From: Camelus dromedarius | Lineage: Eukaryota | Direction of reading: 5' to 3' | Assembly (NCBI RefSeq): GCF_036321535.1 | Contig: NC_087462.1 | Span: 6,200,001-6,264,000, forward strand | DNA length: 64,000 bases | Shown: piece by piece, positions 42,711 to 63,200 of the stretch | Numbering within the stretch: the first letter of the stretch is position 1 | Layout of the letters: every line of letters starts with the position of its first letter | Notes under the pieces: generated by a model | Databases searched by the model: none | What the model saw: the letters and a program-made list of their open reading frames with translations, nothing else | Told to the model about the DNA's origin: nothing | Position numbers and translations under genes: made by a program

Positions 42711-43769
42711 ATGGGCAACCTGTACTCAGAGTACCTAAGCCCCAGCAAGGTTCGGGAACACTATAATCACACCAAGGAGACGCTGGACACGCGGGAGACG
42801 CCCTCCCGCCAGGTGGCCTCAGCCCTCATCATCATCCTCTGCTGCGCCATCGTGGTGGAGAACCTGCTGGTACTCATCGCAGTCGCGCGCAACAGCAAGT
42901 TCCACTCGGCCATGTACCTGTTCCTGGGCAACCTGGCTGCCTCAGACCTGCTGGCGGGTGCGGCCTTCATCGCCAATACCTTGCTCTCTGGCCGTTTCAC
43001 GTTCGGGCTGACACCTGTGCAGTGGTTTGCCCGTGAGGGCTCGGCCTTCATCACGCTCTCTGCCTCTGTCTTCAGCCTCCTGGCCATAGCCATCGAGCGG
43101 CACGTGGCCATTGCCAAGGTCAAGCCCTACGGCAGCGACAAGAGCTGCCGCATGCTGCTGCTCATCGCGGCCTCGTGGCTCATCTCGCTGGTTCTCGGCG
43201 GGCTGCCCATCCTGGGCTGGAATTGCCTGGGCCACCTGGAGGCTTGCTCCACCGTTCTGCCGCTCTACGCCAAGCCCTACGTGCTCTGCGTGGTAAGCAT
43301 CTTCTCTGTCATCTTACTGGCCATTGTAGCTCTGTACATCCGCATCTACTGTGTGGTGCGCTCCAGCCAGGCTGATGTGGCTGGCCCGCAGACGCTGGCC
43401 CTGCTCAAGACAGTCACCTTCGTGCTAGGTGTCTTCATTGTCTGCTGGCTGCCCGCCTTTAGCATCCTCCTCCTGGACTATGCCTGTCCTGTCCGGGCCT
43501 GCCCTATCCTCTACAAGGCCCACTACTTCTTTGCCTTCGCCACCCTCAACTCGCTGCTCAACCCTGTCATCTACACGTGGCGCAGCCGGGACCTGCGGCG
43601 GGAGGTGTTACGGCCGCTGCAGTGCTGGCACCGGGCGGCAGGGGTGCAGGGACGGCGGGACGGGACCCCGGGCCACCGCCTCCTGCCCCTCCGCAGCTCC
43701 AGCTCACTGGAGAGGGGCATGCACATGCCCACATCGCCCACATCTCTGGAGGGCAACACGGTGGTCTGA
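42711..43769 (+). CDS. S1PR2: Sphingosine-1-phosphate receptor 2 (EDG5), 352 aa, single coding exon
   Basis: Intact ORF with 7-TM class A GPCR motifs (ENLLV, LAASDLL, ERH, CWLP, NPVIY) and C-terminal PDZ-type TVV. Strong Kozak (ccaccATGG). Splice acceptor ctgcag| lies 42 nt upstream, so the exon starts at 42669. Confidence 0.99.
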   Translation: MGNLYSEYLSPSKVREHYNHTKETLDTRETPSRQVASALIIILCCAIVVENLLVLIAVARNSKFHSAMYLFLGNLAASDLLAGAAFIANTLLSGRFTFGLTPVQWFAREGSAFITLSASVFSLLAIAIERHVAIAKVKPYGSDKSCRMLLLIAASWLISLVLGGLPILGWNCLGHLEACSTVLPLYAKPYVLCVVSIFSVILLAIVALYIRIYCVVRSSQADVAGPQTLALLKTVTFVLGVFIVCWLPAFSILLLDYACPVRACPILYKAHYFFAFATLNSLLNPVIYTWRSRDLRREVLRPLQCWHRAAGVQGRRDGTPGHRLLPLRSSSSLERGMHMPTSPTSLEGNTVV

Positions 43770-52206: not shown

Positions 52207-52379
52207 TGTGCCCTTCTGGTTCCTTCCACCTTGTCGGCTGGTTCAGCTGGGAGAGTGGGGAAACTTTTAGAGGTATCCCCAGTGCCCTGATTGGAGTCTT
52301 TCTTTGCCAGGTAGTTGTAATACCTTGGTGATTGCCTTTGGTTAAAGGGTTCAAACTTTCAATTAGTTGTGGCAGTTGT

Positions 52380-52542
52380 GGTTAATTAGGGGTCATTTCC
52401 GGGAAGGAGGCGCTTCACGTGAAGTCCTTCTGATTTAATGGCCAGGGCCAGCTCAGTTCTCATCCCTGCTCAGTGTGGTGATGATGATTTTCTTTGCAGC
52501 TCAGGAGCAGACACTGTGTGTTTTCACTTCCTGCACCAGGAG
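52380..52542 (+). other. DNMT1: Candidate oocyte-specific alternative first exon (exon 1o) of DNMT1
   Basis: Non-repeat island about 7.6 kb upstream of exon 1s. Starts GGTTAATTAGGGGTCATT, which is 15/18 to the mouse exon 1o sequence GGTTGATTGAGGGTCATT as I recall it. Ends in a consensus donor GAG|GTGAGT at 52542/52543. Confidence 0.7.
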
Positions 52543-52759
52543 GTGAGTGATTCCCTGAGGTCTGACCACTGGGGCCTGGTGGATGTGAATGGGTGGTGGT
52601 CACAGGACCCAGGTGGGCTAAAGAGGGCTTGGGTGGGCTGAGAGAGGCGAGGCAGGACATACGTGTCTTGGAAGGAAGGAGGCCCAAGCTTGAAGTGGGT
52701 GAGAGAAGTGGGGAGAAGTACCCTGGACCAATGCATTCATCCAGGAGTGGAATTACTGG

Positions 52760-59929: not shown

Positions 59930-60200
59930 CAGGCAAGGCTCCCAGCAGAGGCGCTTGGACAAGCCCACTGCTCAGCGCGGGGGTGCGCGTCTGCCTCGCG
60001 CATGCGCAACCCCTGCGCACAGCCGGCTCCACTGCGTCTGCCCACACATGGTACGGCCTCTCTCCGTGTGGTACGTCCCGCCTTCCCCCACTCCCGGGCC
60101 TGGATGGTACGCGCCGCCTCCGCTCGCCGCCCCTCCCCATCGGTTTCCGCGCGAAAAGCCAGGGTTGCCTGTGCTGCTGCTGCCTCTGCTGCACCTTCTA
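59930..60200 (+). promoter_or_regulatory. DNMT1 somatic CpG-island promoter with NRF1 and overlapping E2F sites
   Basis: GCGCATGCGCA at 59998-60008; TTTCCGCGCGAAAA (bidirectional E2F site) at 60144-60157; GC boxes; no TATA. Confidence 0.8.
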
Positions 60201-60202
60201 AG

Positions 60203-60282
60203 ATGCCCGCCCGTACCGCCCCAGCCCGGGTGCCTGCGCTGGCCTCCCGGGCCTTCTCATTGCCTGACGATGTCCGCAGGCG
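60203..60282 (+). CDS. DNMT1: DNA (cytosine-5)-methyltransferase 1, somatic exon 1 (exon 1s); rest of gene beyond window
   Basis: MPARTAPARVPALASRAFSLPDDVRR(R); 80 nt, phase-2 donor CG|GTAGGT; lies in a CpG island. Confidence 0.96.
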
Positions 60283-63200
60283 GTAGGTGCCTCGGGGGAC
60301 CGCGAACCTGGGGGGGAGGCACGGCGCTGGGGTGGGGGGTCGCTTCCCCTCGGGGTTGCCCGTGGCCGCCGCTGACAGACGGGCGCGCATGCGTGGGATG
60401 GCGCGGCGCGCGGCGGCAGTTGGCGCGGGCAGGGTGGCACTTCCGGTCGCGCGCGCCCCTGGCCGTTTGGCGCCAAAATGGGCCGAGGGCCCTCACAGCT
60501 CCCTGGTGACTAGAAACTTGGGGTCTCTTCTGACCTCAGTTAGAGCAAGCTTTGGGTTTGCCTCCGGGATCCCCTTCCCCGAGCAGCTGCGGGCCCGGCC
60601 CTTGCCGCCAGTCTGGTCGCGCAGGAAGTGGGCAGCCCGCGGCCTCAGGATACCCCTCAGCCCGGGCACTTCGGCCTCCACTTCCGGTGCCCGGTTTGCT
60701 GGGGGGGCTGTCGGGCCGATCTGGTCCCTGGGGGTGTCTTGGGGGGCCCCCTCGGTGCCCCCACACCACACATCCCGATGGCAGCCTTCAGAGACCGACG
60801 TCGCCGGTTGGGGCCCGGGCGCGGCCGTCTCAGGTTTGCGAGCCCCATTTTCCTGGGGAGCTCCCTCCACCTCCTCACACAGCTAGGGAAGTTGCATTCT
60901 GGAAGGAACTCAATGTGCAGTGAGGGCTGGGACTCGGGCAGCGTGAAAGCTGAGTGGTTTCTTTATAGTAAATCTGTGTCTATGAGCCTGGGCATCAGGG
61001 AACCCTTGCTAGGGAAAACAGGCTGCAGTTTCCGGGGGGGGGGGTCGTGAAGGGGCAGCAGTTAATGTCGGGGACTGGCTACAGCTATTCTGTGCACATG
61101 GGTCAGCGGGAAGACCCACACCCCCTCCACCCCTTGTTCGCGAAGGGCTATTTCACTCCTGGAAACTTGCAAACCTCTCTTGGAACACTAGTCACAGTAA
61201 CCTTGACCATCCCGAAAAGAACACTTCCAACCAGATTTGTGAACCCAGTTTTGCCATTTCCCTATTTCCTTGTGCTTGTTTCCCATAACTGTGCCGGGCC
61301 AGTTCTGATCTGGGATTTTAGGGGTAGATTGTATGTGCTGGGGGTATTTGAGTCTCCCTACCAGGTGGCAGACCACTTCTTAATCACAATTGGAGGTTGG
61401 TGTGCCTTGCTGAAGCATCACTATCTATCTTCCCAAGATATAACATGACTTAAAATGGAAATTGAGTAATGAAAATACCTGGCTTCATTGTAGACTTAAT
61501 ACAGAGAAGTTTGAGCCCAGCCTTCCTTACTTTGGTGAGAATGTACCTCCACTGACTCGTTTATGACCTTGGCTAAGTGTCATAAACAGGTTACATCTGT
61601 GGACGAGGAATTGTTAACATGGGCATTAAACTGGTATTGGATTCATTGAGAATATGCCTGGTACATAGAGGGCCACGTGTTAGCATTGTTATTGACTAAG
61701 CTAGCTTGCTTTTTTCAGTTCTGCTAATTGTATAAAACACTTTACATTATCTCATTTAATCCTCAAGTGTTCTCAAGAGTTGTTGCCACAGGAGTTCACT
61801 GCGAGGAAGCAAGGATTCCTGCTGAGGTCTGCTTCTTGCCAAAACCTTTCCCTTCAGCTAGGGGTTTTATTGGGCCAGAGCAAGTGTTTTGTTTGGCTGA
61901 ATTTGAATGTTCTTAGGTGAGTGTTACAATCCACCATTCACCCTAGGTTCCATATTACTTTGAACTAGAATTGCCTACTGTAGATATGGAGTTTGGGGTT
62001 TCTGCCTCAGACCATTGACATTGTCAGCTTACATGACCCTCTCAATGGCTCTTCTTAAATTTTGAATATCCGCATACAAAATACACAAACATGGTATTCA
62101 ATACTCCCTTATACCTTCTTGTGAATGGAGGTATAGCTCTTCTTGATTCATGAAAATTAAAAGTATAATCCATAATGAGTTACCTGAGTCAAGTAGAATA
62201 CTCTAGGAACAAAATTTAGGCCTGTCCTCACTCAGAAATCTTGTCACTTACGCTAACTTGTGTTTATATAACAGCTTGTTTTAAAACTCATGTACAATTA
62301 CATTAGGTATGTAATGATACTGGAAAGTATTTTCAATGTTTGAGTTTTTAAGTCTTAACTCTTGAAGTATTTTATATTTTACATCCTAAGTCTTCTAAAA
62401 ATCATGGCTTTCAGGACAAGCCACATATTTTCCACTTGCTTTTTCTTACTCTGTCTAAGCCACCATCTTTTGTCTAGGAAAAGCAGTAGTCTCCCATTTT
62501 TGTTTCGGTTGCCACTCAGGTCTGTTTTCTATAAGTGGAAACTGATCCTCTTATGGCATAAGTTAGATCCAAAGGTTGTCCTGCCCCATACACTGCCTGA
62601 TGCACTTGGCCTGAAGTCCAGGATCCCCATCCACTTGGCCTGACTCATCTTGTGCTCTTTTCCTCATAAGCCACACAGGCTGCCTTTTAGGTTCTCAGGG
62701 TCTGAGACCTTGCAGAGCAACCAGTGTGAGGCTAGGCTCCACCTACCGTCTCTCCATGCTGGCTACCGTCTGTAAGACTGCTCAGAAAGACAGTCCCTGT
62801 TCCCCACGACAAGAAGAGTGCTGAATTCTGTCAGGGCGTCCTGCATGCTGCCTTTGCAGCTCCGGAGTTGATGCTGATTTGTTGTCTGAGCATGTTTGCT
62901 ACATTTATTGTGTCTGCAGCTGGGTGTCCAGTTGACCATCGAGTAATTGTATGCCAGACTTGCTCCTTCAGTGAAGCTTGGATTTATATATTCATTCTAG
63001 TCCCCTCCTTGCACAACTGATTTAGTCTTTGTAACTATGATAAATTTCTCATCGGCAGGCCACTCTTGATTAGATTAGGCTGTCTTGAAGTTCTTAACTA
63101 GTTCCATGGCTCCTGAATAGGTAGGAATGGAGGTCAAACCGACCTTTTCTAGTTCTCTCCTGCAGTAGGATTCTAGAGGTGCAGATTACTGGGATTCAAA

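What the first reader, a model, noticed from the sequence alone, without database searches (positions are those of the whole stretch)
52380..52542. Putative DNMT1 exon 1o carries tandem ATGs in frame with DNMT1: an oocyte isoform with a new N-terminus instead of a truncation
Seen: ATGATG at 52481-52486. From 52481 to the GAG|GTGAGT donor is 62 nt with no stop (MMIFFAAQEQTLCVFTSCTR+AG), i.e. phase 2, the same phase as somatic exon 1s (80 nt). An upstream ATG at 52438 (weak -3 T) is out of frame. Known: in mouse, exon 1o splices to exon 2 but is non-coding, so translation starts in exon 4 and DNMT1o lacks the first 118 aa, including the DMAP1-interaction region. Inference: if this exon splices to exon 2, camelid oocytes could make a near-full-length DNMT1 with a 21-aa hydrophobic, Cys-containing leader replacing the 27-aa somatic one. 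That would keep the DMAP1 domain and could change stability, cortical retention and imprint maintenance. Exon 2 is outside the window, so the frame is inferred from exon 1s.
Basis: partly seen in the sequence, partly recalled or inferred. Interest (0 to 1): 0.8.

Follow-up and report, generated by a model that had tools for sequence, protein, structure and literature searches.

The report
Camel DNMT1 oocyte exon, in-frame ATG
This stretch is the camel counterpart of the oocyte-specific first exon of the DNA-methylation maintenance gene DNMT1. Its in-frame start codons are real, but they are recent point mutations in an otherwise non-coding leader, so a new protein start is possible and unproven.

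Summary
ATGATG lies at 52481-52486, with 62 nt open to the GAG|GTGAGT donor at 52542|52543. That is phase 2, the same as somatic exon 1s (60203-60282, 80 nt).

Orthology to exon 1o is now well supported:
- The stretch lies between S1PR2 and exon 1s on the same strand.
- The published mouse and pig Dnmt1o primers find their best window matches inside it, in order.
- It aligns with the corresponding region of six other mammals, including a rodent locus that carries the mouse primer exactly.

The in-frame ATG is not a conserved coding feature:
- ATG2 is shared only with Bos. Blue whale has ACG, mink AAG and zebra AAA.
- ATG1 is found only in the camelid.
- 1-2 nt indels shift the frame between orders.
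- 25-29% of random 163-mers carry such an ATG.
- A widely conserved out-of-frame ATG (52438) lies 43 nt upstream.

No transcript or protein evidence could be reached, so a leader-substituted, near-full-length oocyte DNMT1 stays plausible but untested. If real, it would apply to cattle too. My verdict is a new member of a known kind, of moderate-low interest.

The parts
52310..52379 (+). Conserved core of the presumed 1o promoter. It includes a 26-nt insertion at 52342-52367 seen only in the camelid.
   Evidence: The six-species alignment A6 shows the block CCAGGTAGTT..CTTGGTGATTGCCTTTGG..GGCAGTTGTGG shared with Bos, blue whale, mink, zebra and Scotinomys. The insertion is absent in all five.
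52380..52542 (+). Orthologue of DNMT1 exon 1o, the oocyte-specific alternative first exon. The 5' end is set by homology to the mouse 1o primer; the true start of transcription is unknown.
   Evidence: The mouse Dnmt1o forward primer has its only window match (3 mismatches or fewer) at 52380-52397; 0.07 matches are expected by chance. The pig Dnmt1o primer and the pig donor-spanning primer match best at 52515-52529 and 52539-52551. Alignments A4 and A5 cover 7 species. The exon has 3 CpGs.
52438..52440 (+). Upstream ATG in a weak context (T at -3, G at +4). It is 105 nt from the donor, open and in phase 0, so out of frame with DNMT1.
   Evidence: It is present at the aligned position in Bos, blue whale, mink, zebra and Scotinomys, and absent in tarsier.
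52481..52486 (+). Tandem in-frame ATGs. ATG1 (52481) has G at -3. ATG2 (52484) has A at -3.
   Evidence: ATG2 is shared with Bos mutus only. ATG1 is found in the camelid only.
52543..52548 (+). 5' splice site GTGAGT after GAG. It matches the consensus and is conserved.
   Evidence: The aligned GT donor is present in all 7 species. The pig bisulfite primer spans the same site.
60203..60282 (+). Coding part of DNMT1 somatic exon 1s (80 nt, phase 2), donor GTAGGT.
   Evidence: A phmmer search with this peptide returns DNMT1 N-terminal fragments.
42711..43769 (+). S1PR2 coding exon (352 aa), the upstream neighbour that fixes the synteny.
   Evidence: One search lists the ORF. One search finds 92% identity to mammalian sphingosine 1-phosphate receptor 2. 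One search gives the Pfam family 7tm_1.

Best explanation
The interval 52380-52542 is the camelid orthologue of DNMT1 exon 1o, the alternative first exon driven by an oocyte-specific, CpG-poor promoter about 7.7 kb upstream of somatic exon 1s. Across mammals it evolves as a non-coding 5' leader.

Two point mutations created in-frame AUGs in this lineage. At the ATG2 position, outgroups have AAG (mink) or AAA (zebra), while camelid and Bos have ATG and blue whale has ACG. At the ATG1 position, Bos, blue whale, mink and zebra have AGG and only the camelid has ATG.

Inferred mechanism:
1. In growing oocytes the exon is transcribed and spliced from 52542 to exon 2.
2. Scanning ribosomes first meet the weak-context upstream AUG at 52438. 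Its out-of-frame reading frame runs over the in-frame AUGs and ends in exon 2 or 3.
3. Ribosomes that leak past it meet AUG-AUG at 52481/52484, both with a purine at -3. These could make a DNMT1 whose first 27 residues are replaced by a 21-residue leader.
4. Whatever leaks further could start at the exon 4 AUG, as in mouse.

Shown here: orthology, reading frames, splice-site conservation and the history of the mutations. Inferred: transcription, splicing to exon 2 and the choice of start codon. The in-frame AUGs are most likely a neutral by-product, not a selected coding feature.
For: Synteny: S1PR2 (42711-43769), then the candidate exon, then exon 1s (60203), all on the + strand. The exon lies 7.7 kb upstream of 1s. 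For comparison, the pig 1o start is 9.8 kb upstream of 1s and the human 1o interval is given in PMC6117921.

Homology:
- The mouse 1o primer matches uniquely at 52380.
- The pig 1o and donor primers match in the same order.
- The rodent locus L001 holds the exact mouse primer 8.4 kb upstream of its exon 1s and aligns with the window.
- Bos, blue whale, mink, zebra and tarsier also align.

Frames: phase 2 for both 1o ATGs and for exon 1s. Exon 2 begins with one base that completes the codon.

Non-coding behaviour:
- The distance from the upstream ATG to the donor is 105, 105, 105, 107, 106 and 110 nt in camelid, Bos, whale, mink, zebra and rodent.
- The in-frame ATG is present in only 2 of 7 species at that site.
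- Camelid-Bos identity is 85% in the putative coding part and 87% in the 5' part of the exon.
- The chance rate of such an ATG is 25-29%.

Published context: 1o-type upstream transcripts exist in pig and cow oocytes (PMC7216732).
Against: - No camelid transcript or protein data could be reached, so use of the promoter, the 52542-to-exon 2 junction and the start of transcription are assumed from other species.
- The camelid promoter carries a 26-nt insertion not seen in the other species. Its effect is unknown.
- Calling the ATGs neutral rests on few species. Camelid and Bos keep exactly the same ATG2-to-donor length with an open frame, which a short divergence time explains but which does not exclude function.
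- The conserved stretch CTTTGCAG|C at 52492-52500 looks like a splice acceptor. If it were used by an upstream exon, the ATGs would be removed.
Confidence: 0.7

Rival explanations
1. In camelid oocytes the 1o mRNA is translated mainly from ATG1/ATG2. The maternal DNMT1 store is then a near-full-length protein with a new 21-residue hydrophobic leader instead of the mouse-type truncation, and this has functional consequences for stability, localisation or imprint maintenance.
For: - There are two adjacent in-frame AUGs with a purine at -3, while the preceding AUG has T at -3.
- The donor matches the consensus and is conserved.
- The frame matches exon 2.
- Another in-frame alternative first exon of DNMT1 is seen spliced to exon 2 in a transcript-like contig, P0007. 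DNMT1 therefore tolerates replaced N-termini.
Against: - An upstream AUG present in 6 of 7 species starts a frame that overlaps and runs past both ATGs.
- There is no conservation outside camelid and Bos, and the site reads ACG in blue whale.
- There is no coding signature, and the chance expectation is 25-29%.
- No transcript or protein evidence was obtained.
- In the rodent Scotinomys the conserved upstream ATG is itself in frame and open. If mouse is alike, an in-frame AUG in 1o does not by itself prevent the truncated product known from mouse. This could not be checked.
Confidence: 0.22
2. The exon is a relic in camelids. The sequence is orthologous to 1o but is no longer used as a promoter or exon, and oocyte DNMT1 comes from exon 1s, as happens partly in cow.
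For: The core promoter carries a 26-nt insertion seen only in the camelid. The upstream ATTGG (inverted CCAAT) block is not conserved among species. In cow oocytes the somatic promoter is also active (PMC7216732).
Against: The exon and donor are better conserved than the intron that follows: 85-87% against 76% identity to Bos. The donor is a perfect consensus. The conserved core around GGTTAATTAG..GGTCATTTCCGGGAAGGAGG is intact.
Confidence: 0.08
3. The ATGs are spliced out. Transcripts start further upstream and enter at the acceptor-like TTTTCTTTGCAG|C (52499|52500), so only 52500-52542, which has no ATG, is exonic.
For: A pyrimidine tract plus AG lies at 52488-52499. CTTTGCAG is conserved in camelid, Bos, blue whale, mink and zebra.
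Against: The mouse 1o primer lies upstream of this point and works in RT-PCR (PMC3723434), so the upstream part is exonic in mouse. The motif is CTTTGCTG in the rodent and CTTTGAGG in tarsier, with no AG at that point. No upstream exon is known.
Confidence: 0.04

Closest known systems
Mouse Dnmt1 exon 1o / DNMT1o (Mertineit et al. 1998, cited from memory; properties as stated in PMC3836718 and PMC6117921)
   Same: It occupies the same genomic slot, upstream of exon 1s and downstream of S1pr2. The sequence is homologous: the mouse primer GGTTGATTGAGGGTCATT matches 52380-52397 at 15 of 18 positions, and a rodent locus with the exact primer aligns. The conserved upstream ATG and the donor position are shared.
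   Different: Mouse DNMT1o protein lacks the first 118 residues (Mr 175,000). The camelid exon instead has two ATGs in the DNMT1 frame that are absent at that site in the rodent examined. The mouse genomic sequence itself could not be fetched.
Pig and cow DNMT1o transcripts (PMC5471028; PMC7216732)
   Same: These are artiodactyl orthologues. The pig 1o primer and the pig donor sequence match 52515-52551. The promoter is CpG-poor: 3 CpGs in the exon here, and 3 CpG sites in pig 'Region IV'. Bos mutus shares ATG2, its phase and an open frame (MIFFAAQGQMWCVFTSCAR).
   Different: Transcripts are shown in pig and cow but not in camelids. ATG1 is found only in the camelid. The pig primer has one base fewer than the camelid over its aligned stretch, so the pig frame cannot be inferred. 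The warthog locus ended about 240 nt short of the exon.
Alternative first exon inside the DNMT1 CpG island (window 60778-60833; N-terminus of P0007)
   Same: It is an alternative DNMT1 first exon with an ATG in phase 2, giving a short replaced N-terminus joined to LKDLERD... of exon 2.
   Different: It lies about 0.5 kb downstream of exon 1s in CpG-rich DNA. The peptide is unrelated and arginine-rich. For this exon a spliced, transcript-like contig exists in another mammal (P0007), and the peptide is 17 of 19 identical between that protein and the window.

Membership tests
DNMT1 exon 1o (oocyte-specific alternative first exon) | Lies between S1PR2 and DNMT1 exon 1s, on the DNMT1 strand, several kb upstream of 1s | tested here: met
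   The S1PR2 stop is at 43769, the exon at 52380-52542 and the exon 1s ATG at 60203, all on the + strand. In pig the 1o start is 9.8 kb upstream of 1s. In Scotinomys it is 8.4 kb.
DNMT1 exon 1o (oocyte-specific alternative first exon) | Sequence homology to experimentally defined 1o exons | tested here: met
   The mouse primer matches uniquely at 52380. The pig primers match in order. The window aligns with the rodent locus that carries the exact mouse primer and with five further mammals.
DNMT1 exon 1o (oocyte-specific alternative first exon) | Functional 5' splice site at the conserved 3' end of the exon | tested here: met
   GAG|GTGAGT at 52542|52543. A GT donor is aligned in all 7 species. 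The pig primer spans the same junction.
DNMT1 exon 1o (oocyte-specific alternative first exon) | Spliced to exon 2 in transcripts of growing oocytes and early embryos | not testable with these tools
   Exon 2 is outside the window, and no camelid transcript data could be reached. The protein searches returned no 1o-exon 2 fragment.
DNMT1 exon 1o (oocyte-specific alternative first exon) | CpG-poor promoter that is unmethylated in oocytes | tested here: inconclusive
   The region is CpG-poor: 3 CpGs in 163 nt and GC 0.51, against 0.685 at the 1s CpG island. Methylation state cannot be tested.
DNMT1 exon 1o (oocyte-specific alternative first exon) | Non-coding leader, so that translation starts at the exon 4 AUG (the mouse definition of DNMT1o protein) | tested here: inconclusive
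   Two in-frame open ATGs exist here, so the sequence does not enforce exon 4 initiation. Which AUG is used is unknown.
Coding alternative first exon (conserved N-terminal isoform) | Start codon and reading frame conserved among related species | tested here: not met
   ATG2 is present in camelid and Bos only; blue whale has ACG, mink AAG and zebra AAA. ATG1 is found in the camelid only. Distances to the donor differ by 1-2 nt between orders.
Coding alternative first exon (conserved N-terminal isoform) | Substitution pattern of a coding sequence | tested here: inconclusive
   Camelid and Bos differ at 8 of the 59 nt from ATG2 to the donor, my own count on alignment A3. Four of 19 residues differ. 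Identity is no higher than in the non-coding 5' part of the exon, 85% against 87%. The stretch is too short for a formal test.
Coding alternative first exon (conserved N-terminal isoform) | First AUG of the transcript | tested here: not met
   If transcription starts where it does in mouse, the AUG at 52438 comes 43 nt earlier and its frame overlaps both in-frame AUGs.

The most novel reading that the evidence does not exclude
In artiodactyls that carry ATG2 (camelids and bovids), most DNMT1 made from the oocyte promoter is a near-full-length enzyme, not the mouse-type truncated DNMT1o. It would have a 20-21-residue alternative leader and keep almost the whole DMAP1-binding domain. The truncation-based stabilisation model of maternal DNMT1 would then be a rodent or primate feature rather than a mammalian rule. 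This could also explain why a truncated DNMT1o was doubted in cow.
Probability: 0.25. Interest if true: 0.6.

Novelty: new member of a known kind. Interest (0 to 1): 0.33.

Why it matters
Maternal DNMT1 keeps imprints methylated during cleavage divisions. The accepted picture, an N-terminally truncated and very stable DNMT1o, comes from mouse. If cattle and camel oocytes translate the 1o mRNA from an in-frame AUG, their maternal enzyme would keep the N-terminal region that mouse DNMT1o lacks. That region includes nearly all of the DMAP1-binding domain. This bears on how far mouse results on imprint maintenance, cloning and assisted reproduction carry over to livestock. As it stands, the sequence shows only that such a protein is possible. 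The evolutionary pattern points to a chance mutation in a non-coding leader.

Tried and rejected
Papers not held in the library: Hayward 2003 (human 1o), Ding & Chaillet 2002 and Lodde 2009. The cap on papers was reached. As a result, the ATG content of mouse and human 1o and the size of oocyte DNMT1 protein in cow could not be read.

Protein searches:
- A phmmer search with the exon 1s peptide gave only short DNMT1 N-terminal fragments.
- Full-length DNMT1 isoforms could not be reached because of the length filter on query and hit. I could therefore not check whether any annotated camelid or bovine isoform starts with MMIFF... or MIFF....
- The fragment search found no protein with a 1o-derived leader.

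Loci that did not help:
- Otolemur L002 has no convincing 1o homologue in the 9 kb upstream of 1s. The assembly has gaps.
- The gray whale contig L004 holds neither 1s nor 1o.
- The warthog L005 and hippopotamus L007 flanks ended about 240 and 130 nt short of the exon.
- The Megaptera alternative N-terminus (P0021, P0022) is not encoded in any fetched locus.

Other points:
- L003 is the window's own genome. I did not read it, because it spans an N run.
- I rejected the idea that the upstream ATTGG block is a conserved CCAAT box. It is kept only in camelid and Scotinomys.
- I left the third homologous-protein search unused, because no available query could reach proteins of 1,600 residues.

Full report
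**What is in the sequence.** ATGATG lies at 52481-52486, and the 62 nt from 52481 to 52542 have no stop (MMIFFAAQEQTLCVFTSCTR plus AG). GTGAGT follows at 52543. An earlier ATG at 52438 (GATTTAATGG) is 105 nt from the same donor. It is also open, but in phase 0. The coding part of somatic exon 1s is 60203-60282: 80 nt, MPARTAPARVPALASRAFSLPDDVRR plus CG, with donor GTAGGT. Both first exons therefore end in phase 2.

Exon 2 is not in the window. In three other mammals it starts with one G that completes the split codon and is 37 nt long. The frame inference therefore holds, and the leader would end ...TR-R-LKDLERD.

**Is it exon 1o?** Yes, with high confidence.
- The window has S1PR2 at 42711-43769, the candidate 8.6 kb downstream of it, and exon 1s 7.7 kb further on, all on the + strand.
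- The published mouse Dnmt1o forward primer (PMC3723434) has its only window match with 3 mismatches or fewer at 52380-52397, where 0.07 matches are expected.
- The pig Dnmt1o forward primer and a pig bisulfite primer that spans the exon's donor (PMC5471028 supplements) find their best window matches at 52515-52529 and 52539-52551. They lie in the same order and orientation as the mouse primer match.
- I reached other genomes through DNMT1 N-terminal fragments and through S1PR2 orthologues with 10-kb flanks.
- The rodent Scotinomys teguina carries the mouse primer exactly, 8.4 kb upstream of its exon 1s, and aligns with the window.
- Bos mutus, blue whale, European mink, plains zebra and tarsier all align across the exon and share the GT donor.
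- The exon is CpG-poor, with 3 CpGs, as expected for this promoter class.

**Is the in-frame ATG more than an accident?** The evidence says no.
- At the ATG2 codon, camelid and Bos have ATG, blue whale ACG, mink AAG and zebra AAA.
- At the ATG1 codon, only the camelid has ATG. Bos, whale, mink and zebra have AGG.
- Tarsier and the rodent have no ATG there.
- The most economical history is one A-to-T change early in Artiodactyla, later changed to C in the whale line, plus a second G-to-T change in the camelid line. Parallel A-to-T changes are also possible.
- The distance from the conserved upstream ATG to the donor is 105 nt in the three artiodactyls, 107 in mink, 106 in zebra and 110 in the rodent. 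The frame is therefore not kept between orders.
- Camelid-Bos identity is 85% from ATG1 to the donor, 87% in the 5' part of the exon and 76% in the next 60 aligned intron columns. The exon is conserved, but not as a coding sequence.
- By my own count on alignment A3, 8 of the 59 nt from ATG2 to the donor differ. Four of the 19 residues differ.
- An in-frame ATG open to the end is found in 29% of dinucleotide shuffles of the exon and in 25% of natural 163-mers nearby.

**How it most likely works.** This part is inferred. By analogy with mouse, pig and cow (PMC3836718; PMC7216732), the exon is transcribed in growing oocytes and spliced to exon 2. If transcription starts at or before 52380 as in mouse, the first AUG is the one at 52438. 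It is present in 6 of 7 species, with T at -3 and G at +4.
- Ribosomes that use the 52438 AUG read a frame that passes over ATG1 and ATG2. With the exon 2/3 sequences of other mammals, that frame stops in exon 2 or 3 (my reading of the exon 2/3 sequences printed).
- Ribosomes that skip it meet two adjacent AUGs with G and A at -3. Under the scanning model, a sizeable share should start there.
- The product would be DNMT1 with residues 1-27 replaced by 21 others, six residues shorter than the somatic form.
- Pfam DMAP_binding begins at residue 18 of the canonical protein. It is still recognised, from profile position 10, in a natural DNMT1 fragment with a different replaced N-terminus. Nearly all of that domain would therefore be kept.

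I put the chance that such a protein is the main oocyte product at about one in four to one in five. The chance that it is made at some detectable level is higher.

**Cautions.**
- No camelid transcript, junction or protein evidence could be reached.
- The camelid promoter has a 26-nt insertion not seen in five other species.
- In Scotinomys the conserved upstream ATG is itself in phase 2 and open. If Mus is the same, an in-frame AUG in 1o coexists with the truncated protein known from mouse, which would weaken any prediction from sequence alone. I could not fetch Mus.

**Comparison with what is known.** Exon 1o is known in mouse, human, pig and cow. This is its camelid orthologue, so a new member of a known kind. 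The in-frame ATG would be a variant of interest only if it is translated, and it would then apply to cattle as well. That gives the idea a readily testable system. [quoted passage not shown]

A replaced DNMT1 N-terminus is not without precedent. Window 60778-60833, about 0.5 kb downstream of exon 1s, encodes MAAFRDRRRRLGPGRGRL in phase 2. It is 17 of 19 identical to the start of P0007, a transcript-like contig in which this leader is joined to exon 2.

**Verdict.** I rate it of moderate-low interest. The window's S1PR2 protein is found exactly in assembly GCA_036321535.1. From memory this is a dromedary assembly; I did not verify that.

Noticed in passing
window 60778-60833 (+): This is a further alternative DNMT1 first exon inside the CpG island, about 0.5 kb downstream of exon 1s. 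It has an ATG plus 56 nt open to CAG|GTTTGC, in phase 2 (MAAFRDRRRRLGPGRGRL + AG). It is 17 of 19 identical to the N-terminus of P0007, where this leader is joined to LKDLERD of exon 2. It is also present in tarsier at L008 10518-10574.
   Followed up: partly
window 52342-52367: A 26-nt insertion (TTAAAGGGTTCAAACTTTCAATTAGT) lies in the conserved core just upstream of exon 1o. It is absent in Bos, blue whale, mink, zebra and Scotinomys. It repeats an ATTAG-TTGTGG-like motif of the neighbouring sequence.
   Followed up: partly
L001 1650-1759 (Scotinomys teguina): In this rodent the conserved upstream ATG of exon 1o is 110 nt from the donor. That is phase 2 and open (MARVEPALISTHSGSHPQITLCCLGSVTAVCFTFFR), so it is in frame with DNMT1, unlike in the other species examined.
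   Followed up: no
window 52438-52542, Bos L006, blue whale L011: The out-of-frame reading frame from the upstream ATG is exactly 35 codons and open in all three artiodactyls (MARASSVLIPAQCG..., MTRAGSILIPAQCG..., MARAGPILIPAQCG...).
   Followed up: partly
P0021, P0022 (Megaptera novaeangliae annotation): These DNMT1-like isoforms carry yet another N-terminus (MKAVIKKVLQMEGVPSQR) joined to exon 2. No matching DNA was found in the window or in any fetched locus.
   Followed up: partly
window 60188-60202 and P0002-P0004: Gene callers in several mammals read the exon 1s 5' UTR in frame with the DNMT1 ATG.
   Followed up: no
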